Assembly: GCA_965637545.1 (NCBI GenBank)
Contig: OZ281494.1
Coordinates: 16,058,001 to 16,122,000 of the forward strand
DNA length: 64,000 nucleotides
DNA from: Phallusia mammillata
Taxonomy: Eukaryota
Direction of reading: 5' to 3'
Each line of letters starts with the position of its first letter. Within the stretch, counting starts at the first letter, position 1. Below the pieces are notes generated by a model. It saw nothing but the letters and a program-made list of their open reading frames with translations, was not told the DNA's origin and ran no database searches. The translations under genes and the position numbers were made by a program. Below are positions 16,470 through 62,161 of the stretch, piece by piece.

Positions 16470-18453
16470 CTAGCCAAGCGAGCAAACAACACAACGGATC
16501 TCCCAACCAAAAACGTAAGGTTCACAAGGTACACTATAACCACATGTGTTTTCCACAACAAATAAATAAGCTCCATGTTGACTTCCTTTGGTTCCCGGAA
16601 CCACTTGTGGTGTGTCGTCCACACAAAGATGAATGGACGAATGTTTGGTCGTGTCGTGTGAGCCAGTCATAATGTATCCTGTGTATTCGATCGTCCAACC
16701 TTCGGGACATGTTTCACGGCTTGGAATCATAAGCTGAAAATTTTATAAAAATAATCATTACCGTTGCTTTGTTCCTACACTTAAGTCACGAAACATTAAT
16801 AATCCAGTCTAATAAGAATCCGCTTTGGAGGTCACGTCACGATATACATTAACCCTAATAGCACGTTACCTGTGTTGGACTTTGAACCAAGCAAATAGCG
16901 CATGGAACACCTTGATACTGAAGTGCTTGCTCCTCGATAAAAGACAAATCGAACAAAGGGTATTTACTTGGTCCATCTCGATACTCGGCTCCGTAAATAT
17001 AAGAAGGCCCTGTATGTGATGCACGGTGTTGTTATGTTATTTTTGGGAACCAATAAATGCTTTAGAGTATAAAATAAATAAATATTTACTGACCCTGTCC
17101 GCCATCCACATAATGACCTTCGGTATACGTCACGTTATGATGTAAACACAAAAAGTCCGATCCACCTCCAACATGGGAGTAATGCGAGCCCGCAGCATAA
17201 CCTATAGCCGAAAGGTACATTGAGCCTGAACCAAAATACAAATTAGTTACTTACCGTGGTACACCATGCTTGTTCCAGTCTTGATTGGGCAGTCACTTCT
17301 TCCCCACCGTATGTAAGTAGTACCTAATTTGACTTGTGTTACATTTACAATACATAGGATTTCGCACATTACTGAACTTTCCTAGCTATCTGCAGTATGC
17401 AATCAACTGGATTTTCTAATGTTTGCAGAAAGATTTGAAAAAAACACTGGTATAAAGCGCCTTTTGGGCATTGGGTTTGATAATTTCGATCAGTGAAAAG
17501 AAAATATATATAAATAGAAAATAATTATAAATTCGATCACGGCAGCGTTTGTGCAAACACTGAAGTGGTTTTCAAATTTTATTTTTGCCCTATGGAACTT
17601 TCTCAAGTATGCTTAAGCCCTACGTTGGACCCAAGTTCTTTTTAACATTTGTTGATGGACACAACCCACATATCCGGTTTTCGTTCCAATTACCAGCAAC
17701 GCAGAATCAAACTAAGTTGAAAACTGAATATTTATCATAAAAAACACTTAATTCAGTGAAATTTGCCCCCATCGCTGCTTATATGGGTCATAAATACCCA
17801 ATAAAAGGAATACATTTGACAAACTTAAGTTTGATGCTGAATCCTTTTCGTTTTTTAGAAGGCATTAAAGAATCATGGATTCAGAGTTACACTAAGTTAG
17901 CACCTACATTTTTGACGTCCTTGATTAAAGATTTATGTAACTTTTTTCTTGTAAGTTGTATTGAGATATGTGTTTGCTGCCATCATATTATGTTTTGCTT
18001 ATTCCTTTTGATAGTTTAAGAATAAAGTAATAACTATGTTGTTTACCTGTTCCGTAAGTTGTTATCACTGGAGAATCTTCTTCCTAAAAGAAAAGCGAGA
18101 AGCATACAATTACAGTAAAAGTTTATGTGATGCACTTTTTCTACTTACCAATGATCTTTTATGAACAATGTGTTGCAAGTGTTGCCAGTTTTGACCTTGA
18201 ACTTTCTTGACTCCAGATTCTTTTTCTGCCAAGTTTTCTAAACTGCAAATTTGCAATTGCACATTAGGAAAGTGAGTCCCAAGGAGCATATGAGTTTAAA
18301 TTATTATTTTTTAACTAACCGTTTTAGGTACATTGTAACCTGATGGACAACATTTCCAACGCAAAATAATGTCACCAAAAGCAAAAATGTTCCAAAAATC
18401 GGTGGTTTGTTTGAAATCTTACGAACAGAATTTCTGTAGCTTTGCAGTCGCAT
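16470..18453 (-). CDS. A1: type II membrane protein with spongin/short-chain collagen C4-type C-terminal domain, intact, 7 exons, 281 aa
   Basis: Exons 18453-18320, 18242-18149, 18083-18047, 17323-17255, 17201-17094, 17009-16870, 16733-16470 splice in frame (846 nt): MRLQSYRNSVRKISNKPP-IFGTFLLLVTLFCVGNVV(TM)..HIVHKRSLEEDSP..GTTYIRWGRSDCP..GYAAGSHYSHVGGGSDFLCL..YIYGAEY..VPCAICL..LMIPSRETCPEGWTIEYTGYIM..LCVDDTP..VENTCGYSVPCEPY..EIRCVVCSLG. These are the characteristic motifs of the spongin short-chain-collagen domain. Confidence 0.85.
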
Positions 18454-19309
18454 CTTTCTGATCAAGGCACTCAACGGAATGAAATACAACTTGTGATCAA
18501 ACTGGCATGTGAAGTCTCAGATTTGTAATTAATGTTAGTTTGCTATCACGATTTCATTATGACAATCTATCACATGACAAAATATCGATTAAAAAGTCAT
18601 GTTGGAATTTCTATTAAAGTGTAACCTGCATTTGTAAAGTAAAACTCATACCTAAAGTAATATATATGAAAATGGCAGTTTGCTTGTTTGGGGATAGAAG
18701 CTGGTGGTAACTTTGTTAAATTTTTTTCCATAGGTTTTTGTGTTGTTCAGATTTTTTCTTTCTTTTTACAATTTTACTTTAAGACATTGCGGAGAATTTC
18801 CACGACGTCATTTGCACTGCAAGCGGAGTCCAAGAAAAAGAAAATAGCAGGAAACGACACGGAGTAATTTTCGTTCAGTCTGCTAATGTGCTCAATGGTG
18901 TTAATTAAAAATCTGTTCGCTAAGAAAAGTTTTCTTACTCTTTTTCTGACTTACATTTTAAGCAAACAAACAAAACTTTCACAAAACATATAAGCGAACT
19001 CCAATAAAAGTAGGAGACTCGGGTTACGCCTAAAATGCTAGTTTCTTTCAAAACTTTGCTTGTTGAAAACAATAAACATAATTCTAATGATAAACTAAAA
19101 TAGACCAACACTGACCAGTGCATTAACCATGTTTAAATTTGCCATCAAGTGAAAAGCATTGGTGTTTTTGTTGTTTAACATTACGATAAATCTACATGAA
19201 GAAAGTATTCGTATAAAGTGAAGGTATAAAACATGGCATATGCAAAAATTTCAACACGAGTATTAGACCCTGCTGATAAGGTAAATGCTTGTTCATAAAA
19301 ATTGGTAAT

Positions 19310-19510
19310 AAAAGATGTTGGAGAAGTGTCCGCACAATCACGACATGAACATGTGTGATGTACCACAGTAAGTGGCTGATTTCCGTCTTAGTTGAGGCTG
19401 TTAGATCTAAAATATCACGATCGTTTTTGCTCATGTTGAAGGTGGATCCGAATGTTTGTGCTTACATCATAACGTGACGTACACCAAAGGTCAAATTATA
19501 TGGGCGGCAC
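19310..19510 (+). pseudogene. Inverted degenerate family-A fragment (exon 4 and exon 5 homologs)
   Basis: Aligns to A exons 4 and 5 (RCWRSVRTITT*TCVMYH|gtaag; ..GGSECLCLHHNVTYTKG) with an in-frame TGA; opposite orientation to A1. Confidence 0.7.
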
Positions 19511-20113
19511 TTAGGGTCAATATATACTTCATTAATTTGTCAGTACTTTTGTTTGATTTGTTTTCTATTAAACTTACATATCACGCACACCATTTCTAGG
19601 CCCACTTTCAATACATTTTATATTCTGCATTCGTGGGGAATAACGATTCATGTGTGTCTGCAAATTTTTATGTGCATTAAGTTGTGTTTGTGTACATTAA
19701 CCTACTGTTAAGTATAAAGATATTGCAGAAAGTAAAAAAAAGCCTGAGCTTGCTGATTTGATATGATGAGATCAAGTCCGAGTTTAATGGGAGACAAGCT
19801 CACACGCAATGCAGCATTTATGTGTCAGTGTTAAGACTGTTTCGTGTCTTCGATTTCGTTATAGTTAACAATACAAGTACTGTTGTGACGTGCCACTTGC
19901 AGTTTGTTTGTGTAATAAAGCTTTATTTCACATGAAATCTTATGCGGCTTTCATAGGAACTAATGTCATATTTTAAAGAAATATAGTTAAACTTGAAAGT
20001 ACGTTCTCACGAACTGTGTAACGTTTTTAACTTCTATATTAGTATAGTAATAGTTTGAAAAGCTTCGCGGCCCACCAGAAAGCACATCTTCGGGGCCCAC
20101 CGGTTGAAAAGTG

Positions 20114-21486: not shown

Positions 21487-23590
21487 CTAGCCAAGCGAGC
21501 AAACAACACAACGGATCTCCCAACCGTTAACATACGGTTCACAAGGAACACTATAACCGCATGAGTTTTCCACAACAAATAAATAAGCTCCATGTTGGCT
21601 TCCTTTGGTTCCTGGGACCACTTGTGGTGTGTCGTCCACACAAAGATGACTGGACGAATGCTTGGTTGTGTCGTAGGATCCAGTCATTATGTAGCCTGTG
21701 TATTCGATCGTCCAACCTTCGGGACACGTTTCGCGGCTTGGAATCATTAGCTGGAAAATTTAATGAAAAAATCATTACCGTTGCTTTGTTCGTGAACTGA
21801 AGTTGTGAAACATTAATAATAAAGTCTAATAAGAATTTGCTTTGGGGCTCACGTCAAGATGCTTGGATACATTAACTCTAATAGCACCCTACCTGCGTTG
21901 GACTTTGAACCAAGCAAATAGCACATGGAACACCTTGATATTGAAGCGCTTGCTCCTCGATGAAAGACAAATCGAACAAAGGGTATTTGCTCGGTCCGTC
22001 TCGATACTCAGCTCCGTAAATATAAGAAGGTCCTATTAGTGATCAGTGTCCTTAATGTTATACTTGGAAACCAACAAATGTTTTCGAAAACAAAATGGTG
22101 AAATATTCACTGACCCTGAGTGCCGTCCACATAGTGTCCTTCGGTATACGTCACGTTATAATGTAAGCACAAAAAGTCCGATCCACCTCCAACATGGGAA
22201 TAATACGATCCCGCAGCGTAACCTGGATAAATATATTTCAGTAGTACCATCCCCATCTAAGATGGAAGCCACTTACCGTGGTATACCATACTTGTCCCTG
22301 TCTTGGCTGGGCAGTCACTTCTTCCCCAACGTACGTAAGTCGTACCTAATTTGATTTGTAATTGGTTAGATTTGCAATGCTTGGATTTGGTACCTGACCG
22401 GACTTCCCTATTTATCTGCAGCATACGATCATTTGGATTCTAATATTATGTAAAATATTATCTATTGGTATGACGAATTTTAAACGTCTGGTGTAGGCAA
22501 CGGCTTTTTTGATTTCGATCAGAGAACATAAAATACATCTCATAAGAAAAACATGCTTTCGAGAGAAGCGTTTGTGCAAACGCTATAATACTAAAATGGC
22601 TCACAAACATTATACTTTCCCTTTGCAATTTTCTCAAAATGCTTAAGCCTTAAACCCTATACAATGGACAAATAAATAATTTAATGTTTGTTAAAATGCG
22701 TTGAATGTTTGGCACCATTAAACAATCTAGCAACAGAATCAAACTACCGTACATATTAATAAGCTTACACTCCTTTTTTTCAAAGTCATATATTATAAGC
22801 TGAGTACACATAAAACAAAACCTAATCACCAAAATTTTCCCCAACGCATTTCACAGTTAGAAATCGCTGCTTATGTGAGTCACAAAACAAACAGAACAAT
22901 AGAAAGGCTGAATTTGACAAATATTAACTTAGATCTTGAATTCCTTTTCATCTTTGTGAAGGCATCAAAGAAACAGAGATGCACTGCTGGTAACTACATA
23001 TTTCGACGTCAGTGAATATGGCATCGACACGACTTGATGTTTTGTTTTAACTTATAAGCATGCTTTATGCAATATTTTCTTTGTCAGTTGTATTGTATTG
23101 AGATATCTGTATGTCGCCATTATATTATGTTGTGCTTATTTCCCTTAATTGTTAAACTAAAAAAATATAATTGTATAGGTTACCTAACCCGCAAGTTGTT
23201 ATCACTGGCGAATCTTCTTCCTGTAAGAAAAGCGAGCAGCGTACAATTACAGTAAAAGTTTATGTGATGCACATTTTCTACTTACCAATGATCTTTTATG
23301 AACAATGTGTTGCAAGTGTTGCAAGTTTTGACCTTGAGTTTTCTTGATTCCAGATTCTTTTTCCGCCACCAGATTTTCCAATCTGCAAAAAGGCATTTGC
23401 ACATTAGGTTACTGAGTCTTAAGAAGCATATGAGTCAAAATTATTTATTAACTGACCGTTTTAGATAAATGGTAACTTGATGGACAACATTTCCAACGCA
23501 AAATAATGCCACCAAAAGCAGAAATGTTCCAAAAATCAATGGTTTGTTCGAAATCTTACGAACAGAATTTCTGTAGCTTTGCAGTCGCAT
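21487..23590 (-). CDS. A2: type II membrane spongin-domain protein, intact, 7 exons
   Basis: All seven exons are present with the same intron phases as A1, GT-AG sites and no stops (MRLQSYRNSVRKISNKPLIFGTFLLLVALFCV..VHKRSLEEDSP..TTYVRWGRSDCP..CVVCSLG*). Confidence 0.85.
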
Positions 23591-24577
23591 CTTTCTCATC
23601 AGGGCACTCAACAGAATGAAAAAAAACTTGTGATCGAACTGGCATGTGAAGTCTCAGATTTGTAGTTAATGTTAGTTTACTATCACGATTTCATTTTGAC
23701 AATCTATCACATGACAAAATATCGATTAAAAAGTCATGTTGGAATTTCCATTAAAGTGAAACCTGCATTTTTAAAGTAAAACTCTTACCTAAAGTAATAT
23801 ATATATAAATGGCAGTTTGCTTGTTTTGGGATATAATCTGGTGGTAACTTTGTTAATTTTTTTCCTTATGTCTTTGTGTTGTTCAGATTGTTTTCTTTCT
23901 TTTTACAACTTTACTTTAAGGCATTACGAAGAATTTCCACGACGTCATTTGCACTGGAAACGGAGTCCAAGAAAAAGAAAATAGCAGGAAACGACACAGA
24001 GTAATTTTCGTTCAGTCTGCCAATGTGCTGTGTGTTGTTAATTAAAATCTGTATGCTTAGAAAAGTTTTCTTATTTTTTTTCTGACTTACATTTTAACCA
24101 AACAAAATCTTTTACAAAACATATAAGAAAACTCCAATAAAAGTAGGAGACACTTTGGGTTACCCCTAAAATGCAAGTTTCTTTCAAAACTTTGCTTGTT
24201 GGAAACAATAAACATAATTCTAATGATGAACTAAAGTGGACCAACACTGAGCAGTGAATCAACCATGTTTAAATTTGCCACGAAGTGAAAATCATGTTTT
24301 TTTTACTTTCTACAATATCTTTATACTTCAGTAGGTTAAAGTACACAAACACAACTTAATGCTTATAAAATTGAATCGGTATTCCCCATGAATGTGGAGT
24401 ATAAAATGCATTAAAAGTGGGCCCAGAAAAGGTGTGCGTGATATGTAAGTTTAATAAAAACAAATAAAACATTTTTCAGGAAAATGATGCCACAAAAAGA
24501 AGCAAGATCAAAGAGAACTACTTTATATCTTTCCGGTTTTTATGTTTAAGTATTTACAAAATGATGAAATATCTACT

Positions 24578-25624
24578 GACCCTGTGCCGCCAATATAATT
24601 TGTCCTTTCATATACGTTACGTTTTGTTGTAAGCACAAAAAATCGGATCCACCTTCAACATGGGCAAGAAGCGATCCCGATCTTTTACATCTAACAGCCT
24701 TATCTAAGACAGAAATCAGCCAATTTACAGTGGTACATCACACATGTTCAAGTTGTGATTGTGCAGTCTCTTCTCCAACACATTTATTATCCATTTTTTT
24801 TATGATTAAGCATTTACCTTTTCAGCGGTGTCCAATACTTGTGTGGCAATTTTAGCATATACGATGTTTTCATATCCTCACTCTTTTTACATAGCATGCT
24901 TTCGTCATGTGAATTTATCGTAATTGAAACAACAAAAACTGCTTTTTATTTCATGTGGCAAATTTGGACACGGGTTTTGATAAAATTCCTAGAAAATAAT
25001 TATTCCATAGAAATAATTAAATCATTTCCTGAAAACATAATGCTTGGGTTGAGCCATGTTTTAACCTTATCATTTCTAACTGGCATTTTCAAAAATAATA
25101 TTAAAGAGGCTAACATTATTTCCGTCCATAAACGGGGTGATTGAAAGTTAGCATCCAACTATCGACCTATAAGCTTGCTCTCAAACCTTTCCAAAGTGGT
25201 AGACTGGCTAGTTTACAAAATGGTCTACTCATTTTTTAAATCTTTAAACTTCTTCTCCGACTGTCAATTTGTATTTCGAGAGCATCACTCAACAAGCCAT
25301 GTAACCACCAAATTTATATCTGAAGTGACTGAGAGTTTAAACTCAAAAAATCAAACATTGAATATATTCGAGCTTCCTTGTCTTTAGTTTCTTTTCCCCC
25401 ACCAAATTTTCTAAACTGAAAATTAGCAGTTGCACAAAAGGAGAGTTTATGATGCATATAGATACAAAATACAATTTTGCGTCCACTAACCGTTTCAAGC
25501 GAATAATTGCTTGATAGAAAAAAAATTCAACGCAAAATAATGCCACCAAAAGCGGAAATGTTCCGAAAATTAGTGGTTTGTTTGAAATCTTATCAACATA
25601 ATTTCTGTAACTTTGCAGTCGCAT
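24578..25624 (-). pseudogene. A-psi: degenerate fifth family-A gene (exon 1, part of exon 2, exons 4-5; LINE fragment inside; last two exons absent)
   Basis: Exon 1 MRLQSYRNYVDKISNKPLIFGTFPLLVALFCV..LKR|gttagt starts at 25624; exon 2 starts LENLVGEK and is then cut by RT sequence; decayed exon 4/5 homologs at about 24578-24790. Confidence 0.75.
25020..25345 (+). mobile_element. Degenerate CR1/L2-like LINE reverse-transcriptase fragment
   Basis: KEANIISVHKRGD*KLASNYRPISLLSNLSKVVDWLVY..CQFVFREHHST is the RT N-terminal NYRPISLL..K / QxGFR..ST motif, with an internal stop. Confidence 0.85.
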
Positions 25625-25959
25625 CTTTCTGATCAAGCACCTAATGGAGCAAAATAAAACTTGTGATCAAACTGGCACGTGTTACAGATTTGTAATTAAT
25701 ATTAGTTTGGTATCACCGTTTCATTATGGTAATCGATCATATAATAATATATCGATTATACATTCATACTGAAGTTTCCATTAAATAGAAACCATAAAGA
25801 AAAAGTACAATGTAAAGTATTTTAAACATATAAAATGGCATTTTGCTTGTTTAATGAATTTAAATTCTGGCGCGTCTTTGTCATTCTACTTTAACCAAAA
25901 TTGATTGTGTTACCTACATTTTCTGACCGTGATTTTCAGTTTAGCTATAATACACTACG

Positions 25960-26065
25960 TAGCAACTTCTATGACGTCTTTGAACTACCAACAGAGCCCA
26001 TGCAAAAATTAAAGAGAATGTCAGGAAACGACGCAGTGCTATTTTCGACCACTGCTAATCTACTG
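25960..26065. promoter_or_regulatory. Conserved segment between divergent A and B starts (homologs at about 18780-18900, 23920-24050, 34660-34770; reverse complement at about 31741-31830 and 43045-43130)
   Basis: Homologous block (gacgtc..caggaaacgac.cag..attttcg..ctgctaat) recurs upstream of A genes and upstream of B genes. The regulatory role is inferred only from position and retention. Confidence 0.4.
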
Positions 26066-26367
26066 TGCGTTGATTGAAAAACCAAGTATTCGATGGAGTT
26101 GGCAACCTTGTTTTGTCACCTCTATCGTCCACGTTTATCCCTTCTCATTGACTGCATCAGAGTTTCCGTTATTCAAACTTCATTTAAATTCTTACTACGT
26201 AAAGAAGCCTTGTGAACAAAGTAAAGACTTCAGATGCCCAAATACAGATTGATTGTCAGAATATCACCGCAAATGAAATAGACAGATAGATATGGCAAAT
26301 AAGAGAGGCATACTTTTATTCAATTGAGCTGACAAGTTTGTGGTTCATTTTCATTAAAGACATCAAG

Positions 26368-27598
26368 ATGCTTCAATGGACAACGACTTTAATTTTAAGT
26401 AAGGAAAATTCATTGCATAAGATGTTCATTTTTTCATCATGTATAAGATGTTCATTTTTCGGTTGTTTTTTAAGTCATGGCCCTAATGCAAGAAAGCGAT
26501 GGAGAAACTTGTCAGGTACATTTAAATGGATCACATGGATCTTTTTTGTACTCTGGAAACTCTTCTCAAATATGCACTTGGGTGTTTGGAAGTGAAACTT
26601 TGCGAAGTAATGTTATTTGTATCTCTTCAGTTTCAGTCTTTTATTGGCAAAGATGACTTCAACGTCAAGTTGCCAGACGGTAAGAGTTTTATTTACACCA
26701 AAATTTGAGGTTACAGATATATTCCACCTAAACGTTATTCCCAGCTCAATTATTTACAATTTTGGATCCTTAATTTAGATACCGATCTTAAAATTGCATC
26801 ATACAACACTTCGACATTCCCGGGACCTTGGTGTGGCCTTTATGTAAAAAAACAAAAAGGAAACGAAGTTAGTTGTCAGCCTGAAGTGGTGTTTGACAAC
26901 AAAATATGCAAAAACGAATCAATCACTAAAGAAAGTGTAAGTTGGCCTCCAAGGATGTACACAAGATTCCCGAAACAGGTTTTGGTGATAAGTTATGCAA
27001 TTTTGGATTGCCCAAACCATAGACTCCACCCATTCAGCACAACGCCAACGACAACAGGTGAGTATGTTTAATTGTAGAGAAGGAAAATAAGTCAAACTTG
27101 CAAAAGCAGCTCCTTACGAAAAATCTTTATGTTTCTGGCTGACAACAGAAATAATAATCAAAACACTATGTTTAAATTGAAACGTATTATTGCAGGTTCT
27201 TTTAAGCAAACCACAAAACAATATTCTTCTACCGAAAGAGATTTCTTTGACAAAAACGGAAAAACAATATTTGTTGTTGCAACAACATCGTTTGGTATTT
27301 TATTGCTGGTCGCTTTTTCAGTGGTTTTCTTGCTGTTAAAAAGAAACGCGTAAGTGTTTTTAAGTTGTGAATGAATTTTAAACATCCAATAATAAGGAAT
27401 TCAACACACAAAAAAGTCCACCAATTACTTTAACACTCTGTTTACATTTTGTTTGAGACAGGGTCGTTCTAAACTAGTTATTTTTCCACACGCAGGGCAC
27501 TGAAGCGCAAAGCGGTATTTTCGACACAAAGATCACAAATCTATGGTTTGGACACAGTGCACTACCATGCTTATTCATTGGCTGAGTCACAAAGATAA
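26368..27598 (+). pseudogene. B1: CUB-like type I membrane receptor, tail class IYGL..HYHAYSL; +1 frameshift in exon 2
   Basis: Exons 26368-26398, 26475-26679, 26779-27057, 27196-27349, 27496-27598. Signal MLQWTTTLILIMALMQESDG; TM IFVVATTSFGILLLVAFSVVFLLL; tail KRNAALKRKAVFSTQRSQIYGLDTVHYHAYSLAESQR*. gttatttgtatctcttcag has one extra base versus gttattctgtctcttcag in paralogs. Confidence 0.8.
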
Positions 27599-28689: not shown

Positions 28690-30690
28690 TTATGCATTGT
28701 TGGGAATTGGTCTCACGTTCATGTAAGTTGGATCTTCACTATTCGATGTCTTTCTTCCAGCTCTGCATATTTTTGAGTTAAAAATCTGAAAGTAGTCAAT
28801 GACATAAAAGACTTACCTCAGTTTAATGATCAGGGAGAAAATGACAACGAGAGCCAACAAAAGTCCAGTGCCCAACACTACTGCCACAATCGTCAAAATA
28901 TTTGTATTTGCAGCTGATTCTGTTCCAGTCGTTGTGGCTGTAAAAGACATAAGGTCAAGCACAGAAAAACATCTCAATAGTATAACCTACATTGTGTCCA
29001 AACATCATCCAATATAACCTCCCATTGATAGGGTGAAAAGTAGTAATGCACCGAACCTAACCGAACCCGCCTCAAAAAGGTTCGGACCGAAACCGAATAC
29101 AGTAAACTTTGGGTAATCCGGAACCGATTGGACCGGAAAATTATCCCGATTAGGCGAACACCAATGTCTTTTTTTCAGGCTTACGTTATCTAGGCAGTGG
29201 TTGATCGGTACAATCACCTTAATTGCGATCAACTTCCCTATAATGACAAAAATAATTGCGTTGGTATGTTGGTATTGAGTGCCTGAAAAGCATTGGGCAA
29301 AATTTTGTGCACTTGACTGTTCGTTCATACGCGGGGTTTCAATAGCGTTCAAATAACAAGTAGCTAACAGGAAGCAGTTATTATAAACTACAACGTCACT
29401 GCAACATGGTTTGTTATACAAATCTGCAATCGTAACGGAAAAAGTCCGGATGAAAATTTTATCCTGAATTTAGCGGTATCCGGATTAACCACAGTGTTGA
29501 GTAAACAAAGGTAATACAAACCATTTGTCCCTCAAGTTTTGCTCGAATTAGGCAAAGATCAGATTCCGGTTTAATCGACGTTTACTGTATTTGGCCATGA
29601 TGTCAACTAATTTGGGCCGAATAAAGCCAAACCTAAAATACCTCTTTTTGTTACATGTTTTCAACTGAAGTTTGTGTTGTTGATGCAGGCGAACTTATCA
29701 CATTCCAAAACAAAACACCTACTAATTGCAGACAACGTGGCTCGTGTTTTATAATGCAACAACTACATGATGTTTCAGATTGGCGATCATCAAGGTTTAT
29801 CTGTATTAATTTAACACATTAAAAGGGGGGTCTGTTCCGCCTATCAAAAGTTTCAAAAAAGGAAAGGAATCGAAGCAGCGTCGAAACGGAATATTCGGCA
29901 GATGTTTCGGCAAACCGAAACTTCGGTGCATCACCAAATGAAAGCAGCAGCTATCTTCTGTTGTAGCAAAAACTACTCATCTCCTTTGGCTTTTCCAAAA
30001 AGACATACGCACCTGTGGTTGTTGGCGTTGTGCTGAATGGGTAGAGTCTAAGGTTTGGGCAATCCAAAATTGCATAACTTATCATCGAAACCTGTTTCGG
30101 GAATCTTGTGTACATCCTTGGAGGCCAACTTACAGTTTCTTTGGTGATTGGTTCGTTTTTGCATATTTTGTTGTCAAAGTCCACTTCAGGCTGACAAACA
30201 ACTTCGTTTCTTTTTTGTTTTTTAACATAAAGGCCACACCAAGGTCCCGGATGTGTCGAATTGTTGTCTGATGCAATTTTAAGATCTGTGTCTAAAACAA
30301 GGGTCTAAAATTGTAAATAATTGAGCTGCGAATAACGTTTAGGTGAAATATATCTGTAACCTCAAATTTTGGTGTAAATAAAACTCTTACCGTCTGGTAA
30401 CTTGACGTTGAAGTCATCTTTGCCAATAAAAGACAGGAACTGAAGAGACAGAATGACATTACTTCGCAAAGTTTCACTTCCAAACACCCAAGTGCATATT
30501 TGAGAAGAGTTGCCAGAGTGCAAGAAAGATCCATGTGTTCCATTTAAATGTACCTGACAAGTTTCTCCATCGCTTTCTTGCATTAGGGCCATGACTTAAA
30601 CAACCACCGAAAAAATGAACATTTGCTCAATCCTATACATTGCACTGAATTTTCCTTACTTAAAATTAAAGTCGTTGTTCATTGAAGCAT
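28690..30690 (-). pseudogene. B2: CUB-like type I membrane receptor, tail class EDPTYMNV; nonsense at codon 4 (TGG>TGA)
   Basis: Exon 1 reads ATG CTT CAA TGA. The remaining exons are open: ETCQVHLNGTHGSF..WCG..WPPRMY..DCP; TM ILTIVAVVLGTGLLLALVVIFSLII; tail KLRAGRKTSNSEDPTYMNVRPIPNNA*. Confidence 0.78.
29041..29936. mobile_element. Old hAT-like non-autonomous element forming most of B2 intron 3 (homologous sequence in B3 intron 3)
   Basis: TIR-like ends tagtaatgcaccgaa / rc tggtgatgcaccgaa (13/15); subterminal CCGAA/AACCG motifs; TSD is poorly preserved. Confidence 0.45.
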
Positions 30691-45698: not shown

Positions 45699-45774
45699 CT
45701 TTCTCATCAGGGCACTCAACAGAATGAAATAAAACTTGTGATAGAACTGGCATGTGAAGTCTCAGATTTGTGAT

Positions 45775-48855: not shown

Positions 48856-50126
48856 TTATCTTTGTGACTCGGCCAATGAATAAGCATGGTAGTGCAACTG
48901 TTCCACTGTGTCCAACCCATATATTTGAGATCTTTGTATCGAAAATACTGCTTTGCGCTTCTGTGCCCTATGTGTGGGAAAATAACTAGTTTAAAACGAC
49001 CCTGCATCAAACAAAATGTAAACAGAGTGTTAAAGTATTTGGTGGGATTTTGTGTGTGTTGAATCCCTTATTATTAGATGTTTAAATTGGATTTACAACA
49101 CAAAAATACTTACGCGTTTCTTTTTAACAGCAAGAAAATCATTGAAAAAGCGGCCAGCAATAAAATACCAAATGATGTTGTTGCAACAACAAATATTGTT
49201 TTTCCATTTTCGTCAAAGAAATCTCTATCGGTAGAAGAAACTTTCTTTGAAGTGGATTGCCTCGAAAAATCTGCAATTGAAACCTTCCGATTTCGCTTAT
49301 TTGAGCAAACCATTTTCTGATTGAGTGTTTTGATTATTATTTCTGTTGTCAGTCAGAAACATAACGATGGTTCGTAAGGAGTAACGATGGTTCGTAAGAA
49401 GTTTGACTTATTTTCCTTTTCTACAATTAAACATACTCACCTGTTGTCGTTGGCGTTGTGCTGACTGGGTTGAGACTATGGTTTGGGCAATCCAACAGTG
49501 CGTAACTTATCACCACAACGTGTTTCGGGAATCTTGTGTACATCCTTGGAGGCCAACTTACACTTTCTTTAATAATTGGTTTGTTTTTGCATATTTTGTT
49601 GTCAAAGTCCACTTCAGGCTGACAAGCAATTTCGTTTCCTTTTTGCTTTTTTACATAAAGACCACACCAAGGTCCCGGATGTGTCGAATTGTTGTCTAAT
49701 GCAATTTTCAGATCGGTGTCTAAAACAAGGTTGTAAAAATGTAAAGAAATTAGCTGTGAATAATGTTTAGGTAAGATATATCTGTAACCCCAAATTTTGG
49801 TGTAAATAAAACGCTCACCGTCTGGCAACTTGACGTTGAAGTCATTTTTGCCAATAAAAGACAGGAACTGAAGAGACAGAATAACATTACTTCGCAAAGT
49901 TTCACTTCCAAACACCCAAGTGCATATTCGAGAAGAGTTTCCAGAGTACAAAAAAGATCCGTGTGTTCCATTCAAATGCACCTGACACGTTTCAGCTCCC
50001 AAGCTTTCTTTCATCAAGACCATGACTTAACAATATAAAAAAATGAATAAATTCTCAGTCTTGTACACAATGTACAGTATAATGAATTTGCTCACTTGAA
50101 ATGAAGATGGTTGTCCATTGAATCAT
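48856..50126 (-). CDS. B5: CUB-like type I membrane receptor, tail class IYGL..HYHAYSL; apparently intact
   Basis: Signal MIQWTTIFISIMVLMKESLG; ectodomain ORF 50023-49427; TM IFVVATTSFGILLLAAFSMIFLLL; tail KRNAAQKRKAVFSIQRSQIYGLDTVEQLHYHAYSLAESQR*; all splice sites GT-AG with paralog-matching phases. Confidence 0.8.
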
Positions 50127-51012: not shown

Positions 51013-52296
51013 ATGCTTCATCTTACATCTTCAACATGGATTATAGGTCAACTCGTGATTTCAGGTGAGTGTATATTGCAGTGTATATAAGACTCAGAAT
51101 TTGTTTCATTTTGACTGTTATAGGCATTATCAAAGGAGAAGTTCAATCCAATAGTTGCCCAGTACATTTGAATACAACACATGGATCCTTAATGTACACT
51201 GCAAACTCATCAGAAATATGCAGCTTCATATTCGGAAATAAAAATGTGCGAAGTGATGTTATCCTATCTCTTCAGATTCCCTCGTTCATAGGCAATGTTG
51301 ATAAATTCTACGTCCATTTGCCAGATGGTGGGTTGCATCAAGTTTGTTGATTTTTGCTTTGACGTTTCTTGCAAAAACGTTTTGCTAGCTCCAAGTTTTA
51401 AGTAATATTAGAGAAATCACTTTAAAAACTAGGTACCTGTTTTGCTACTCATTAATATTTTTTCCGTCGTTGTTTTTAGATCATGTTCTTAAAACCGTAT
51501 CAGGCAACACAACTCCTGCGGACTTTTGGTGTGGTCTTTACGTAAAAAGTCGAAACAGAAACGAAGTTACTTGTCAACCTGGAATAATGTACGATAACGG
51601 GATATGCGAAAACAAACCAATTACTTCAGAAAGTACAAACTGGCCGCCGCGGATGTACACGAGCTTTCCAAAAAGTGTCGTGGTGATAAGTTACGCGTTC
51701 CTGGAGTGCCCGACTCACAAATGTAATACTTTATATTAATTAAACAAAGTTTCAAACCAAAAAAAGAACCAGTGTGTCAATGTAAATGTATTGAATGCAT
51801 ATAACCATGAAGTAATATACTGTTTTAATTTTGCCTGTTTAACTATACAAAAACTATATGTCTTATATTTAACGCTAAGCTGTCCTTTATGATAAAAATA
51901 TTATAAACAAAAGTTTCTATTATATTTTAAATTTTTTTGCAAACATTTTTTTGCAGTAACTACAAAAATTGCAAGCGACTCAGCTGCAAATACAAACGCT
52001 TCCAGGGCCGTAGCAGTTGTATTTGGTATTTTCTTTTTGCTAGCCCTGATTGTTATTTTCGCCCTTGTCACTAAAGTCAGGTAAGCCTTTTTGACTCTTT
52101 TAAATTCATTAGTATTTGCCTTTTTTACACAATAATATGCAGAAAGGAAAAGAACTCGAACATTGAGGATCCAGTGTATGTGAACATGCGACCTATTCCC
52201 AACAATCATCAGTGTGAAACTTCAAACGCAACAGAACCATCAGCACACTCTCCATTATCTGTGCAACAACAAGATACCTCCTGTCAACTTACGTAA
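51013..52296 (+). CDS. C1: divergent CUB-like type I membrane receptor with EDPVYVNM tail; apparently intact
   Basis: MLHLTSSTWIIGQLVISGIIKG; SCPVHLNTTHGSLMY..ICSF..FWCGLYV..TCQP..ICEN..WPPRMY..ECP; TM AVAVVFGIFFLLALIVIFALV; tail TKVRKEKNSNIEDPVYVNMRPIP..CQLT*. The 3' end could extend if cttac|gtaag is a donor. Confidence 0.78.
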
Positions 52297-54422: not shown

Positions 54423-55936
54423 ATGTACAAGTGGATCGCAATGTTTCTGGTTGGTAAGGCAACTTATTTTATAACATAAGTGTAATTAAACGGAGCATAC
54501 TAATTTCATAGTTTCAGGTGTGACCCAACAAAGAGTTTTTGCCAGATGTCCAACTGGTATCAATCAATCTCACGGTGTCGTGTATTACACCAGCAGATAT
54601 ACGCTTAGTAAATACAGCAGATATATGCTTAATGAAAAATGTAATTGGATTTTCATGATGGGCGCCAACCTAAAAAGCGATGTTATGCTCTCTGTTCAGT
54701 TTCTCCATTTTTACACCTACATGCTGGGTTACGTCTCGTTACCAAATAGTAAGTAAAAATTCATAGGAAACTGAATGTTTCGTCTCAATGAAATTTAAAA
54801 ATATGTGTCATGTTTTTTACAATGGCCATTATGTTTCGTAGACCAAAGTATGAACACTAGCTACATATCTTCAAGTGACGACCCATGGTGTGGAGTTTAC
54901 GTGAAGCAAAATGACTTAAACGAAACAACCTGTCGAGCTGGAATTAAGTTAATAGGAAAATGTCAAAATCAACCCGAGACAGCAGTCAGTAGATATTGGC
55001 CTCCTCGCATGACAACAACAAGAGTGTGGAAAATCACTGTTTCTTATGGAGTTTTGGAATGTCCACAAGCTAGTAAAATTTATCCACCCATGACAACAGG
55101 TCGGCATAAAAAATGACTACACACTCCTCAGTTAGTTAGGTTGCTTTTATTTTGTATAGTTCACTATGACTGCTATTTTTGATATTGTTTCTCGTGAAAA
55201 AGCTTTTTACAGCAAAAAGGAAAAAAATCGACCTTAGATATATTTACAGAAGCTTCACTCACCACAAACCGGTTAGCATCTACATCAGGAACAAGCACCA
55301 GCATTGATCAATGCCAGGAGTCACACATGGCAACAATTGTGGCAATTACACTTGGTGTTTTCCTGGTTATGGCACTAATTGTCATTTATGTTCTTTTTCG
55401 CAAAACCAGGTATGTATAATTGTGGTGGTAAAGAGTAAACGTAACAATTGGCGTCTTTCTATTTAGCGGCCAAAAGATTCGCATAACCCCTATATACTTT
55501 ATTAAACCAAATATACTAAACAAAAAGTACCCGGAGAGCAAGCAAATTAGATGCATGAAAAGTAACAATTTAGACAGGTTTTACTACTGAAAGTAACCTC
55601 GCATAATATTGCTTTTTGATACATAGCCACTAAAACGCTGCCGACAGTCACGTACACGTTCGTCACAGTTATGCCAAAAAACGGTCGTTTTGACGAACAC
55701 TAGCTGTTCTCACTTGTTATGGACTCAGGCTTAAAGCTTGTTTATTCTAGTTTTGTGGTGACCAATCGCATATTAAGTTATATAACACGATTTCCCCATG
55801 TAAACGTTTTCATAGGACAAGAAAACCAAACATCGATACAATATATGCTGAGGTTGCAGCCGTCGCAAACAGGCCACAGAGTAATGAAGTGATTAACAAC
55901 GAGATTTATGTTTCCGCCGAAGCGGTTGGGCTATAG
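54423..55936 (+). CDS. D: most divergent CUB-like type I membrane receptor, with ITSM (TIYAEV) tail; apparently intact
   Basis: MYKWIAMFLVGVTQQRVFA; RCPTGINQSHG..KCNWIF..PWCGVYV..TCRA..KCQN..YWPPRM..ECP; TM IVAITLGVFLVMALIVIYVLF; last exon 55816-55936 RTRKPNIDTIYAEVAAVANRPQSNEVINNEIYVSAEAVGL*. Same 5-exon phase pattern as B and C. Confidence 0.78.
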
Positions 55937-58900: not shown

Positions 58901-60989
58901 GTGAAAGTAGCTCAGATAATAAATAGGACGTTCCAGGTAAAGTTAGGCACGAATCACGTTCGTTATATTGAAACTCAAGTCCGAACCCGGTAGGAATTTA
59001 AACCCGCCCCACAAGTACGAGGCACTACTGTTGGCCGTCAAACGCTCGTTTTTGAGAACACTTTTTATGTTAACAATTTTCGATTATCGTGTTTCTTTTA
59101 AATCTTAATTTTTTCTGAGATATTGATTCAAAATCTTTTGCACTCGATAAAGCATTTAGGTAAAACTGCAAATTCGCTCTCAGGTAATGTTGTTCTTTTT
59201 GTTATGGCGTCGTTTGCCTACCCAGCCTTTCTGCAATGTTGTACAGCTAAGTGTCAGACAAAACATTTTTTTAAATAAACATGCGCATGCAAAGTTGGAT
59301 CTGCATAAACAAGGAAGTAAAAATAATGTGTTGGTCCTTATCCACTGATAACATTTAAACACACTCGCCAATTGACAACCATCTGACTTTTTAACAGAGT
59401 TCTCGATATTTGCGATATATAGTGCTTTTGATTAAAGCCAGGTCTTATTATATGAACAAGAACCTCTGGCGCTGTTAACATTCAGCAAGTTGTTTGAAAT
59501 ATGAACATAAAAAGATTTAGGCATACGCCAACCAATACGGTGTTGAAATAACACTTTCATTAAAGAAAAACTAACAATAAATTTTAAAAAAGAAAAAAAC
59601 TAAACAGTCAGGTGTTTTCTGCAAATTGAGATTTAGTGTTAATATGTTAAAATTATAGGAAGAATAGGAAGAAAACCAATGCGTTGATTAAAATTGTCAC
59701 GAGGAATTTTCTTTAATTTTTGTAACTCAAAATTGTAAAATGAACAAACTGTTAGCAAATCATTGATTGTTTTTATTGTATCATAGGAATTGGTTTCATT
59801 TGCGGGTAGCGATTCGAACTTACCCTCGAAAATTCAATTTCGGCCCAAAAAGAGGCGTTTGATACACTATTACTTAATTGTTTGTCGCATTCCCATAACT
59901 TGCAGCTTTCGACGTATCAAATACCATGTGGACATTGTTGGACTGATGTAAATATAAATTTCAGTGCATTTGAAAACGATCTCCGATGTATAAAGGATCT
60001 CCAAAACACACTCAGAGTTGCCACCAACTAAAGCAATAGCATGTAAAATAGCATTTGGACGAAATTGGTTACAATATAAAGTGTATTAGGTAAGCGACAG
60101 GCCGTGCACACTGTTTCGATCCATAAGTTCTCATCCCTGCTGCCGGTGACAATACGTTGGTCGTTTGGACAAGTGTAATCGAGGCGTTGGATAACAAAAA
60201 AGCAACCGGGAGGATATTCAGTTGAAACACACAGTTCAGTGACAAGGGATATTGGACATATCTTAAATACAAGCAAATTAGGTGTAACGTTTACTTAACA
60301 ACGACTACTTCCAACATGGAACTTCATTCGACGTACATTCACCTTAAACATCATATTTTTGATTAGGGAGGGAAATTTAAAATTAACAAGCTGTTGAATA
60401 AAAAAGTTTCTGAAACAGTGTCTGGAGTCCTTGCTATACATATTTTCACTCATTGAGCTTAAACTAATTCTGCACGCTGTTTGTTGGAAATAGGATCACC
60501 CGTAAACCTCAATAATCAACTCGTATTTGTTAAATCAGGCTTGTTGGCTTGCATTTTGCTTGTGCTGAAAGTTTTTGAATTTACCGTGAACAGCGACGTT
60601 TTGTCAAAAACATATTGAAAAAGAATAATTACAGAGTTTAGGAATTACCATCTAGACTTTTAAACCTTTGAAACACACAAAACCGCGTTAGCTTATTGGT
60701 TTACAATACCCCTTGTGTGACTTGAGAGCTTTTCGCCTACGCGCATGTGATTTCCGTCATTCAAATTTGTACACAATATAAGCGACGGCAATATCTCATG
60801 GGAAGTTTAAAAGTTCAGGCAAAAAACGTAATTAAAAATTGAATACAAATAAGTTAATGTAAGATTGCGTTAATTGCATGGGCATTTGGGGAAAATATAG
60901 CAAACCAAAACTAGGAATTGATTTGTTGACCTCATTTGCTAATTGTTTGTGTTTTTTAGTATGCTTTTTAATATCAACCTAAACATATT

Positions 60990-62161
60990 ATGCTTTATCT
61001 TAAATCTTTAGCATGGATTATAGGTCAACTTTTGATTACAGGTAAGTGTATAGCTGTGTATAAGACTCTGAATTTGTTACATTTTGGCTGTTTTAAATCA
61101 TAGGTCTTTTAAAATGAGCCGTTCGAGCTGAAAGTTGCCCAGTACATTTGAATACAACACATGGATCCTTAATGTACACTGCAAACTCATCACAAATATG
61201 CATCTTCATATTCGGAAATAAAAATATGCGAAGTGATGTTATCCTATCTCTTCAGATTCCCTCGTTCATAGGCGATGTTGATAACTTCTACGCCCATTAG
61301 CCAGACGGTGGGTTTGTCAGTCTTTTTTTGTATTTTCTTGCAGAAACATTTTGCTAGCTCCAAGTTTTTAATAATATTAGAGAAATCACTTTATAATGTG
61401 GTTTGCTTTTTTTGCTACTCTTAAGTATTTTTTCCATCGTTGTATTCAGATCATGTTCTTAAAACCGCACCATGCCTGCAGGCAACACAACTCCTGCGGA
61501 CTTTTGATGTGGTCTTTACGTAAAAAGTCGAAACAGAAACGAAGTTACTTGTCAACCTGGAATAATGTATGATAACGGGATATGCGAAAACAAACCAAGT
61601 ACTTCAGAAAGTTCAAACTGGCCGCCGCGGATGTACACGAGCTTTCCAAAAAGTGTCGTGGTGATAAGTTACGCGTTCCTGGAGTGCCCGACCCACAAAT
61701 GTAATACTTTATATTTGTTAAACAAAGTTTCAAGCTGTCCTCTATGATAAAAATATTATGAACAAAAGTTTCTATTAGTTTCTGTTATTAGTTTTACTTT
61801 TTTGCAAACATTTTTTTGCAGTAACTACAAAAATTGCAAGCGAATCAGCTGCAAATACAAACGCTTCCACGGCTGTAGCAGTTGTATTTGGTATTTTCTT
61901 TTTGTTAGCTCTGATTGTTATTTTCGCCCTTGTCACTAAAGTCAGGTAAGCCGTTTTGGCTCTTTTAAATTCATTAGTACTTGCCTGTTTTACACAATAA
62001 TATGCAGAAAAGAAAAGAACTCGAACATTGAGGATCCAGTGTACGTGAACATGCGACCTATTCCCAACAATCATCAGTGTGAAACTTTAAACGCAGCAGA
62101 ACCATCAGCACACTCTCCATTATCTGTGCAACAACAAGATACCTCCTGTCAACTTACGTAA
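60990..62161 (+). pseudogene. C2: duplicate of C1 with at least three in-frame stops
   Basis: Colinear with C1; AAA GGA>AAA TGA, CAT TTG>CAT TAG and TGG>TGA in the WCG motif; TM and EDPVYVNM tail exons are still open. Confidence 0.85.

What the first reader, a model, noticed from the sequence alone, without database searches (positions are those of the whole stretch)
16470..62161. Candidate undescribed recognition locus: spongin-domain type II proteins linked head-to-head with CUB-like tyrosine-motif receptors
Seen: two unrelated membrane-protein families are interleaved over about 46 kb. A-psi and B1 diverge with 743 bp between start codons, and A3 and B3 diverge across about 1.8 kb that includes a MITE. 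The same promoter-like block is found upstream of A genes and, reverse-complemented, upstream of B2 and B4, so the ancestral unit looks like an A<- ->B pair. A has no signalling tail and a possible shedding site; B carries cytoplasmic tyrosine motifs. Known analogies: linked receptor-ligand pairs such as NKR-P1/Clr, and tandem paired immune-receptor clusters. Inference: a co-regulated ligand/receptor or receptor/co-receptor system for self/non-self or pathogen recognition in an invertebrate.
Basis: partly seen in the sequence, partly recalled or inferred. Interest (0 to 1): 0.85.

Follow-up and report, generated by a model that had tools for sequence, protein, structure and literature searches.

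The report
Sea-squirt gene cluster: NC1-like and CUB-like genes
This 46-kb stretch of a sea-squirt genome is a half-decayed cluster made by copying one ~11-kb block that held two unrelated genes (a collagen-less, cysteine-rich surface protein and a small CUB-fold receptor with tyrosine motifs in its tail); nothing I could test shows that the two work together.

Summary
Family A has 4 full copies plus fragments, all on the minus strand. Family B has 8 copies, not 4. The 743-bp and ~1.8-kb head-to-head spacings hold, as do the reused upstream block, the MITE and the tail tyrosines.

New here:
- A conserved intron splits the B "ORF".
- Only A1, A2, B5, B6 and B7 are clean. B3 carries a MITE at a splice acceptor. 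A3 has a 19-nt exon deletion. A4, A-psi, B1, B2, B4 and B8 are broken.
- The interleaving comes from a threefold tandem copy of one ~11-kb unit, A(-) B(+) B(-). It therefore reflects one ancestral adjacency, not several.
- B is an ascidian-restricted, uncharacterised family (Clavelina, Phallusia). A modelled homologue's ectodomain matches CUB domains (Z 7.3-8.7).
- A has no Gly-X-Y. Its only PDB matches are collagen IV NC1, and they are non-significant.
- Linkage is not conserved. Six A-anchored and six B-anchored loci from other assemblies each lack the other family.
- Copies evolve under purifying selection.
- RNA evidence is minimal.

Earlier notes of this scan report the same CUB-like receptor family in other clusters of this genome and mention no A genes there. 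The ligand/receptor reading is unsupported.

The parts
16470..18453 (-). A1: 7-exon gene, 297 aa, open frame. It uses the second Met because the first ATG is ATA here.
   Evidence: canonical GT-AG at all junctions. Exons 18320-18453, 18149-18242, 18047-18083, 17255-17371, 17094-17201, 16870-17009, 16470-16733.
19127..19741 (+). Inverted duplicate of 24297-24973 (the 3' part of A-psi).
   Evidence: 80-83% identity, reverse orientation.
21487..23599 (-). A2: 7-exon gene, 301 aa, open frame.
   Evidence: Exons 23457-23599, 23286-23382, 23184-23220, 22277-22393, 22115-22222, 21893-22032, 21487-21750.
24419..25633 (-). A-psi: old, degenerate A copy. Only exons 1-2 (25347-25633) and a piece of exon 5 (24594-24680) are recognisable.
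   Evidence: about 70% identity to the other A 5' regions, with many stops.
25789..26090 (.). A-type upstream block in the A-psi/B1 intergenic region. Inverted copies lie at 31714-31984 and 43027-43304.
   Evidence: 79-80% identity over 270-290 bp. It also matches the upstream regions of A1, A2 and A3.
26368..27598 (+). B1, tail type 1. Pseudogene: frameshift in ectodomain exon a near 26613.
28690..30690 (-). B2, tail type 2. The ectodomain exons are open, but codon 4 of exon 1 is TGA (TGG in the other copies), so it is a probable pseudogene.
31714..31984 (.). Inverted remnant of the A-type upstream block, upstream of B2.
32978..34333 (-). A3: 19-nt deletion in exon 5. The frame is kept only by a cryptic donor 24 nt downstream, which replaces the conserved YTEGxYVDGxQ loop. 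Probably damaged.
35917..36010 (.). Small (~95 bp) TIR-bearing insertion in the A3-B3 intergenic region.
   Evidence: insertion relative to the four other B upstream regions.
36092..38479 (+). B3, tail type 2, 268 aa, open frame. A MITE is inserted exactly at the exon-a acceptor, and the target-site duplication recreates a tag| acceptor.
   Evidence: Exons 36092-36122, 36802-37008, 37108-37380, 38130-38334, 38389-38479.
36195..36800 (.). 606-bp MITE with TIR TAGGGCTGTTATCAAATAAAT and 8-bp target duplication GTCATGGT.
40080..41933 (-). B4, tail type 1. Pseudogene: exon-a acceptor AG>AA, 2-nt deletion at the start of exon b, premature stop, and foreign DNA after 41270. The ends given are approximate.
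43027..43304 (.). Inverted remnant of the A-type upstream block, upstream of B4.
44309..45707 (-). A4. Pseudogene: 1-nt deletion in exon 2 and 5-nt insertion in exon 4. A 1.1-kb insertion separates it from its upstream block (46849-47059).
48856..50126 (-). B5, tail type 1, 261 aa, five exons. All junctions are canonical and the frame is open.
   Evidence: Exons 50096-50126, 49819-50025, 49441-49719, 49114-49270, 48856-48967.
51013..52296 (+). B6: divergent ectodomain (about 55% aa identity to B5), tail type 2, 258 aa, open frame. It lies head-to-head with B5, with ATGs 886 bp apart.
   Evidence: Exons 51013-51064, 51124-51327, 51480-51722, 51957-52080, 52143-52296.
54518..55936 (+). B7: most divergent copy (about 31% aa identity to B5), third tail type (..TIYAEV.. 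and ..NEIYVS..). The frame is open from exon a onward. The first exon is not resolved.
   Evidence: Exons 54536-54748, 54842-55099, 55250-55409, 55816-55936.
60990..62161 (+). B8, a copy of B6. Pseudogene with nonsense codons in exon a (..FYAH*) and exon b (..ADF*CGLY).

Best explanation
This is a lineage-specific birth-and-death gene cluster in an ascidian genome. It holds two unrelated families that became neighbours once and were then copied together.

Family A. The proteins are about 300 aa. They have a basic 20-residue N-terminus, a 20-residue hydrophobic anchor (type II, or an unusually long signal peptide), a spacer, and a 10-cysteine, two-part C-terminal domain. That domain most resembles the NC1 domain of spongin or collagen IV, but the protein has no collagen repeat.

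Family B. The proteins are about 260-270 aa type I membrane proteins. They have a signal peptide, one very divergent CUB-fold ectodomain (signature WCG..YV...C...C...WPP...SY..L.C) and a Thr-rich stalk. These are followed by a TM helix and a 30-50-aa tail with conserved tyrosines. There are three tail types:
- type 1: ..IYGLDTV...HY.AYSLAE..
- type 2: EDPxYxNxxPIPN
- B7: TIYAEV

History. An ~11-kb unit, A(-) B(+) B(-), was tandemly triplicated (21.0-31.7, 31.7-43.0, 43.0-50.5 kb), and A1 was added. An older run of B genes (B6-B8) follows. Half of the copies have since decayed.

Mechanism I commit to (inferred, not shown). B proteins are cell-surface receptors whose CUB domain binds an extracellular partner. 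They signal through phosphorylation of the tail tyrosines. YxN would be a Grb2-type SH2 site and TxYxxV a SAP/SHP-type site. A proteins are surface or matrix proteins that act independently of B. Physical proximity reflects duplication history, not an obligate pairing.
For: - Gene models with canonical GT-AG sites and open frames exist for A1, A2, B3, B5 and B6, and for B7 from exon a onward.
- The B intron has invariant GT/AG in all 8 copies. The 'stops' of B1/B2/B4 and a B4 frameshift fall inside it. The spliced homologues P0007 and P0013 lack those ~33 residues.
- The self-comparison shows the three units and the inverted remnants of the A upstream block.
- Selection is purifying. dN/dS is 0.17-0.26 for the A coding sequences and 0.07-0.20 for the A last exon. 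It is 0.26-0.51 for the B2/B3/B5 ectodomains.
- B relatives: a profile search of 1.84 billion representatives gave 11 hits (two of them low-complexity repeats). The named ones are Clavelina lepadiformis XP_076815627 and a Phallusia mammillata protein named after Ciona LOC101242234. Both are 'uncharacterized'.
- An AF2 model of the Clavelina homologue has ectodomain pLDDT mostly 62-88 (one block 53). The top 19 VIA matches are all CUB domains (Z 7.3-8.7, rmsd 2.5-4.7 A, 95-108 residues). Most of the top Foldseek matches are also CUB.
- Linkage is not conserved. Six A-anchored loci show the same exon structure and tandem A copies but no B. Six B-anchored loci, including a Clavelina array of at least 4 tandem B genes, show no A.
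- Earlier scan notes list other B-type arrays in this genome and mention no A genes there.
Against: - Transcription is barely documented. In four runs only guessed to be RNA, contigs at 85% likeness or more touch the A3 last-exon bins at depth 1.6-5 in three runs. They touch a B2 ectodomain bin at about 1.5 in two runs. There are no splice joints.
- The NC1 assignment of A is not statistically supported. Pfam gives nothing. The PDB matches have E 0.55-2.9. An AF2 model of the last exon is unusable.
- The CUB assignment rests on a homologue about 30% identical to B and on middling Z scores.
- Absence of linkage was tested only within +-10 kb, in loci whose species are mostly unknown.
- CUB domains do bind collagen-family proteins, so a functional link between A and B is not excluded.
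Confidence: 0.6

Rival explanations
1. A and B are a co-regulated ligand/receptor (or receptor/co-receptor) pair driven by a shared bidirectional promoter, and they serve self/non-self or pathogen recognition.
For: - Two head-to-head A/B arrangements exist (744 bp and 1.76 kb), and remnants of the same intergenic block lie beside B2 and B4.
- B has a receptor architecture with Tyr motifs.
- Several solved CUB complexes are with collagen-family partners, including PCPE-1 with the procollagen C-propeptide and MASP-1 CUB2 with the MBL collagen-like domain. Both are among the fold matches.
- Low-depth contigs touch both A and B bins in the same two runs.
Against: - All adjacencies derive from one ancestral unit.
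- No head-to-head A/B pair has two undamaged genes.
- The clean A1, A2, B5, B6 and B7 have no partner of the other family.
- The other family is absent within +-10 kb in 12 loci from other assemblies.
- The A domain is highly conserved between paralogues (dN/dS 0.07-0.2), unlike polymorphic recognition ligands.
Confidence: 0.12
2. B genes alone form a 'paired receptor' system. Near-identical ectodomains are joined to alternative TM/tail modules that signal differently, as in vertebrate KIR, LILR or SIRP clusters. A is a passenger.
For: - B1 and B2 share 969 bp (promoter through exon b) at 92% identity. The homology stops about 11 nt past the exon-b donor, and unrelated TM/tail modules follow, type 1 versus type 2.
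- Each duplicated unit carries one gene of each tail type: B1/B2 and B4/B3.
- The type 2 motif EDPxYxNxxPIPN is conserved between B2/B3 and the much older B6/B8.
Against: - Neither TM helix has the charged residue typical of activating partners, and neither tail has a canonical ITIM or ITAM.
- In the B1/B2 and B3/B4 pairs at least one member is broken.
- An earlier follow-up on another cluster of this family reported that the inhibitory-versus-activating split did not hold (not checked by me).
Confidence: 0.25
3. The whole cluster is a decaying, functionally irrelevant segmental duplication (a pseudogene field).
For: - Six of 13 copies carry frameshifts, nonsense codons or lost splice sites, and two more are blemished: A3 (deletion) and B3 (MITE).
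- Transposon insertions are frequent.
- RNA contig depth over exons is very low, while neighbouring repeats are deep.
Against: - Five genes keep complete open frames and canonical splice sites.
- dN/dS is well below 1 at dS 0.15-0.38.
- Tail motifs are conserved between old paralogues.
- Homologues are annotated as expressed genes in Clavelina and Phallusia.
Confidence: 0.1

Closest known systems
Spongin short-chain collagens / collagen IV NC1 domain (Exposito 1991 and Aouacheria 2006, as cited in PMC5395295)
   Same: - A has a C-terminal Cys-rich domain with CPxGW..Y.GY at the start of its last part. Collagen IV NC1 chains are the only PDB sequences matched by A1 and by the homologue P0002, in the right register.
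- A has 10 cysteines from the DCP motif onward, equal to the 7 shared plus 3 spongin-specific cysteines described in PMC5395295.
- The spongin family is reported from tunicates (PMC5395295).
   Different: - There is no Gly-X-Y collagen stretch in the window or in six homologous loci.
- A has an N-terminal membrane anchor instead.
- Pfam C4 does not match.
- The PDB matches are non-significant (E 0.55-2.9).
Single-pass CUB-domain receptors (neuropilin, Kremen, Neto, CDCP1)
   Same: B has a type I topology and an ectodomain with the CUB beta-sandwich fold, shown on the homologue model. It also has a cytoplasmic tail with tyrosines.
   Different: - B has one CUB-like domain only, of about 140 aa with six cysteines.
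- There is no Pfam CUB match.
- The tails are very short.
- The family has been found only in ascidians.
- It forms large tandem arrays.
Genetically linked receptor-ligand pairs (NKR-P1/Clr; by my own knowledge also Ciona s-Themis/v-Themis and Botryllus fuhc/fester)
   Same: Two unrelated membrane-protein genes are interleaved in one cluster, some of them head-to-head.
   Different: Linkage is not conserved in the other assemblies tested. There is no evidence of binding, polymorphism or diversifying selection. The adjacency derives from a single duplication unit.
Paired immune-receptor clusters (KIR, LILR, SIRP)
   Same: Evolution is by birth and death. Near-identical ectodomain cassettes are joined to different TM/tail modules, with the breakpoint in the intron after the ectodomain.
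   Different: The ectodomain is CUB-like, not Ig or lectin. There is no charged TM residue and no canonical ITIM or ITAM.

Membership tests
Spongin short-chain collagen | Short collagenous (Gly-X-Y) domain N-terminal to the NC1 domain | tested here: not met
   no run of 5 or more Gly-X-Y triplets in any frame of the window or of homologous loci L001-L006. The A gene models contain none.
Spongin short-chain collagen | C-terminal domain homologous to collagen IV NC1 | tested here: inconclusive
   Collagen IV NC1 chains are the only PDB hits for the A1 last exon (E 0.83) and for homologue P0002 (E 0.55-2.9), aligned at CPxGW..GY. The profile search, P0004 alone and Pfam C4 gave nothing. hhalign between the two halves of the domain gave E 0.086. 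The AF2 model of the last exon has pLDDT 40.
Spongin short-chain collagen | Ten cysteines in the NC1 domain (7 shared with collagen IV plus 3 spongin-specific; PMC5395295) | tested here: inconclusive
   A1-A3 have 10 Cys from the DCP motif to the C-terminus. Only the count agrees. The positions could not be aligned to a spongin sequence.
CUB domain | CUB beta-sandwich fold | tested here: met
   The model of homologue P0007 (E 7e-13 to the B profile) has ectodomain pLDDT mostly 62-88 (one block 53). The 19 best VIA matches are all CUB domains, Z 7.3-8.7. Most of the top Foldseek hits are CUB, E about 2e-3, prob 0.97-1.0 for the first five. This was tested on the homologue, not on a window protein.
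CUB domain | Sequence match to the Pfam CUB profile | tested here: not met
   no CUB hit at E up to 10 for the B exons, P0007, P0013 or P0009.
CUB domain | Calcium-binding acidic/Tyr residues of ligand-binding CUBs | not tested
   No residue-level superposition was made.
Linked receptor-ligand locus (NKR-P1/Clr type) | Linkage of the two families conserved between species | tested here: not met
   Six A-anchored loci (three ENA assemblies) lack B. Six B-anchored loci, including the Clavelina chromosome locus L007, lack A. Only +-10 kb was tested.
Linked receptor-ligand locus (NKR-P1/Clr type) | Physical binding of the two products | not testable with these tools
   The spliced proteins could not be handed to the fold tools, and no multimer tool is available.
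Linked receptor-ligand locus (NKR-P1/Clr type) | Co-ordinated expression | tested here: inconclusive
   only low-depth contigs over the A and B exon bins, in runs merely guessed to be RNA, with no joints.
Paired immune receptors | Similar ectodomains on different TM/tail modules | tested here: met
   B1 and B2 are 92% identical over 969 bp, ending about 11 nt past the exon-b donor, followed by unrelated tails of type 1 and type 2.
Paired immune receptors | One partner with an ITIM, the other with a charged TM residue and adaptor use | tested here: not met
   The TM helices of B3, B5 and B6 have no charged residue. The tails read IYGLDTV / HYHAYSLAE and EDPTYMNL, and neither fits the ITIM or ITAM consensus.

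The most novel reading that the evidence does not exclude
The anchored, collagen-less NC1-like A protein is the cell-surface ligand or cis-partner of the neighbouring CUB-fold B receptors. This would be a new use of the known CUB-to-collagen-family recognition mode (PCPE/procollagen C-propeptide, MASP or C1r/s with collagen stalks). The pair would have been born as a divergent gene pair and then amplified as a cassette in one ascidian lineage.
Probability: 0.08. Interest if true: 0.8.

Novelty: new variant of a known kind. Interest (0 to 1): 0.35.

Why it matters
Ascidians are the closest invertebrate relatives of vertebrates, and they lack Ig-based adaptive immunity. Large, fast-turnover families of surface receptors are candidates for their recognition systems.

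This window documents two things. One is an undescribed, ascidian-restricted family of single-CUB-fold receptors with modular tyrosine-motif tails. The other is a collagen-less, apparently membrane-anchored relative of the spongin/collagen IV NC1 domain.

The analysis also removes an attractive but unsupported idea, that the two form a linked ligand-receptor pair. The interleaving is the footprint of one duplicated block. Exact exon coordinates and the list of intact copies now make expression and binding tests straightforward.

Tried and rejected
- Word-indexed protein search with the 198-aa B ORF found nothing. With the family alignment it returned only P0007, P0013 and one fragment.
- Pfam scans of A and B exons and of their homologues gave no relevant family.
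- A profile of the A last exon against PDB gave no hit. P0004 alone gave none.
- The AF2 model of the A last exon with 10 sequences had pLDDT 40 and was unusable for a fold search.
- I tried stacking the A N-lobe exons onto the C-lobe to build a repeat profile. MAFFT misaligned them, so I abandoned it. hhalign of the C-lobe against exon 5 gave E 0.086.
- tblastx to find B tail exons was uninformative. The tails were defined from DNA alignments instead.
- RNA: the four runs laid are Logan contigs only guessed to be RNA. Coverage fell mainly on transposon-like repeats, and there were no A or B splice joints.
- Aouacheria 2006 is not held. Paper searches for 'short-chain collagen C4-like' together with tunicates found nothing.
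- I first counted the stops TKI* and LQF* and a B4 frameshift as pseudogene lesions. I rejected that once the conserved intron was seen.
- I first counted B2 as intact. I rejected that after finding TGA at codon 4 of exon 1.
- I considered 'tail swapping' between units. The pattern is explained more simply if the B3-B4 pair is an inverted copy of the B1-B2 pair (B3 matches B2, B4 matches B1).

Full report
**What the window is.** The sequence is eukaryotic, 32-41% G+C, with no N runs. Exon-sized ORFs recur in it. The closest named relatives of its genes come from ascidians, so I treat it as a sea-squirt genome. The species name is coded in the run table.

**Family A.** The 86-aa last exon occurs four times, all on the minus strand. 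I projected exon boundaries across the copies and read the alignments.
- This gave a 7-exon gene with canonical GT-AG junctions.
- A1 (297 aa) and A2 (301 aa) are open.
- A3 has a 19-nt deletion in exon 5. A frame survives only through a cryptic donor 24 nt downstream.
- That donor replaces the loop YTEGxYVDGxQ, which is conserved in homologues from other assemblies. I therefore regard A3 as damaged.
- A4 has a 1-nt deletion in exon 2 and a 5-nt insertion in exon 4.
- A-psi (24.4-25.6 kb) keeps only exons 1-2 and a piece of exon 5.

The protein has four parts. It starts with a basic 20-residue N-terminus. Then come a 20-residue hydrophobic stretch, a spacer, and a domain with 10 cysteines from the DCP motif onward.

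A2 has KSK and A1 has neither.

**Is A a spongin/NC1 domain?**
- Pfam finds nothing in any exon.
- phmmer against PDB returns collagen IV NC1 as the only hit for the A1 last exon (E 0.83).
- It does so again for the homologue P0002 (E 0.55-2.9). There TCPTGW..YTGY aligns to the CPxGW..GYSF that opens each NC1 subdomain.
- A profile of ten sequences and P0004 alone found nothing.
- hhalign between the two halves of the domain gave E 0.086.
- The AF2 model was unusable.
- The cysteine count (10) equals the 7+3 described for spongins, and spongins are reported from tunicates (PMC5395295).
- No Gly-X-Y run exists in the window or in six homologous loci.

My reading is that the domain is probably NC1-like (about two in three, partly from my own knowledge of 'short-chain collagen C4-like' proteins). 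By definition it is not a short-chain collagen.

**Family B.** tblastn finds eight ectodomain copies. An alignment of all eight shows an invariant GT and an invariant ..TAG flanking a ~105-nt segment. That segment varies in length in B6-B8.
- The in-frame stops of B1, B2 and B4, and a B4 frameshift, lie inside this segment.
- The spliced homologues P0007 and P0013 lack the ~33 residues it would encode.
- So the ectodomain is split by a phase-1 intron, and the 198- and 209-aa 'ORFs' are read-through accidents.
- Exon 1 encodes about 10 residues of signal peptide.

Full models with canonical junctions are open for B3 (268 aa), B5 (261 aa) and B6 (258 aa), and for B7 from exon a onward.

The lesions are:
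- B1: frameshift in exon a.
- B2: TGA at codon 4.
- B4: lost acceptor, 2-nt deletion and premature stop.
- B8: two nonsense codons.
- B3: a 606-bp MITE exactly at the exon-a acceptor, whose 8-bp target duplication recreates a tag| acceptor.

**B tails.**
- Type 1 (B1, B4, B5) ends ..SQIYGLDTV(EQL)HY.AYSLAES.R.
- Type 2 (B2, B3, B6, B8) carries the conserved EDPxYxNxxPIPN.
- B7 has TIYAEV and NEIYVS.
- None is a canonical ITIM or ITAM, and no TM helix has a charged residue.

**What B is.**
- The word-indexed search found nothing.
- A profile built from the eight copies was run against 1.84 billion representatives. It gave 11 hits, two of them low-complexity repeats.
- The named hits are Clavelina lepadiformis XP_076815627 and a Phallusia mammillata protein named after Ciona LOC101242234. 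UniRef labels an identical-length member of the Clavelina cluster 'CUB domain-containing'. All are uncharacterised.
- An AF2 model of the Clavelina protein, with 19 family rows, is an all-beta ectodomain with pLDDT mostly 62-88 (one block 53).
- Most of the top Foldseek hits are CUB domains, with E about 2e-3.
- The exhaustive VIA search returns only CUB domains in its first 19 rows (Z 7.3-8.7, rmsd 2.5-4.7 A, 95-108 residues aligned across model residues 16-170).
- The Z values are middling by the tool's own caveat, but the list is homogeneous.
- Pfam CUB does not match.

'CUB-like' is therefore supported at the fold level, on a homologue.

**Architecture of the locus.** The self-comparison shows three tandem units.
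- Unit 1 (21.0-31.7 kb): A2, A-psi, B1(+), B2(-).
- Unit 2 (31.7-43.0 kb): A3, B3(+), B4(-).
- Unit 3 (43.0-50.5 kb): A4 and B5(-). The plus-strand B has been lost.
- Units 2 and 3 are 85% identical over 2.8 kb across their junction.
- B3 matches B2 and B4 matches B1, so the convergent B pair is inverted between units 1 and 2.
- The 270-290-bp A-type upstream block sits beside B1 (25789-26090). It also sits, inverted, beside B2 and B4. These are remnants of the same divergent intergenic region.
- A1 is an extra tandem A copy, with an inverted A-psi fragment behind it.
- B6, B7 and B8 follow on the plus strand without any A.
- B5 and B6 are themselves head-to-head, 886 bp apart.

The 'interleaving' is therefore one ancestral adjacency copied three times.

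**Tests of the pair hypothesis.**
1. *State of the pairs.* In A-psi/B1 both genes are broken. In A3/B3 both are blemished. The clean genes A1, A2, B5, B6 and B7 have no partner of the other family.
2. *Conservation, starting from A.* The A last exon finds six exon-sized ORFs at 51-60% identity in ENA assemblies. Their loci L001-L006 show the same exon structure and tandem A copies. They show no B by tblastn or by profile HMM, while the window control scores E 1e-25 to 1e-54.
3. *Conservation, starting from B.* The Clavelina locus L007 holds at least four tandem B-like genes on one strand, and L008-L012 hold one to three. None has an A-like exon within +-10 kb.
4. *Selection.* dN/dS is 0.17-0.26 for the A coding sequences and 0.07-0.20 for the A last exon. 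It is 0.26-0.51 among the B2/B3/B5 ectodomains, at dS 0.15-0.38. This is purifying selection, with no sign of diversification between paralogues.
5. *Expression.* Two DNA runs hold the stretch. Runs guessed to be RNA hold 0-3% of its words. I laid them on 28401-34400 at 85% likeness.
   - Contigs pile on transposon-like repeats (29.4-30.0, 31.2-31.8 and 32.47-32.6 kb).
   - They only graze the A3 last-exon bins (depth 1.6-5 in X3, X7 and X8) and a B2 ectodomain bin (about 1.5 in X3 and X7).
   - There are no A or B joints.
   - This neither shows nor excludes transcription.
6. *Earlier notes of this scan.* They list at least four other clusters of the same CUB-like 'WPP' receptor family in this genome (about 25, 13 and 8 copies). 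'Spongin' is noted only in this window. These are unchecked leads, but they agree with B arrays existing without A.

**Conclusion.**
- The domain labels are reasonable. B's CUB fold is supported. A's NC1 likeness is suggestive only, and A is not a collagen.
- The functional inference of a linked ligand/receptor system is not supported by the tests available.
- What remains of interest is an undescribed ascidian family of modular single-CUB receptors, already met elsewhere in this genome by the scan. There is also a collagen-less, anchored NC1-like protein subfamily.

Noticed in passing
window 26099-27067 and 30003-30959: B1 and B2 form a 969-bp inverted repeat at 92% identity, higher than any other B pair. 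The homology ends about 11 nt past the exon-b donor. This suggests gene conversion of the promoter-plus-ectodomain cassette between convergent neighbours that carry unrelated tails.
   Followed up: partly
window 4342-5832 (-): A 496-aa ORF with a Tubulin_3 domain (E 2e-21), misato/DML1-like. It is an ordinary flanking gene, seemingly in one long exon.
   Followed up: partly
window 10281-10679 (-): An ORF with a calcium-binding EGF domain (E 6.5e-10). It is probably an exon of a multi-EGF gene in the left flank.
   Followed up: no
window 40798-41184 (-): A 128-aa ORF inserted behind the broken B4 ectodomain. It has a ..YIGET.RS...R..E.. stretch that reminds me of GIY-YIG endonuclease modules of Penelope-like elements. 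Pfam gave no hit.
   Followed up: partly
window 29400-30000, 31200-31800, 32467-32608: These stretches collect many contigs at 85-95% likeness and high summed depth in all four runs laid, with loose ends on both sides. They are dispersed repeats (transposon fragments) present in many transcripts or loci.
   Followed up: no
window 53505-54335, 58945-59709, 63402-63998: A ~0.8-kb block at 83-85% identity follows each of B6, B7 and B8. The older B genes were therefore also duplicated as gene-plus-block units.
   Followed up: no
L007 (Clavelina lepadiformis OX392444.1, 14.71-14.73 Mb): The tandem B-like genes lie inside the span of a gene annotated with an 8972-aa product on the opposite strand. 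The array is nested in a giant gene.
   Followed up: no
window 18083-17371 and 23220-22393: Intron 3 of A1 and A2 is 680-790 nt, against 52-65 nt in A3 and A4. This is an insertion shared by the two intact copies.
   Followed up: no
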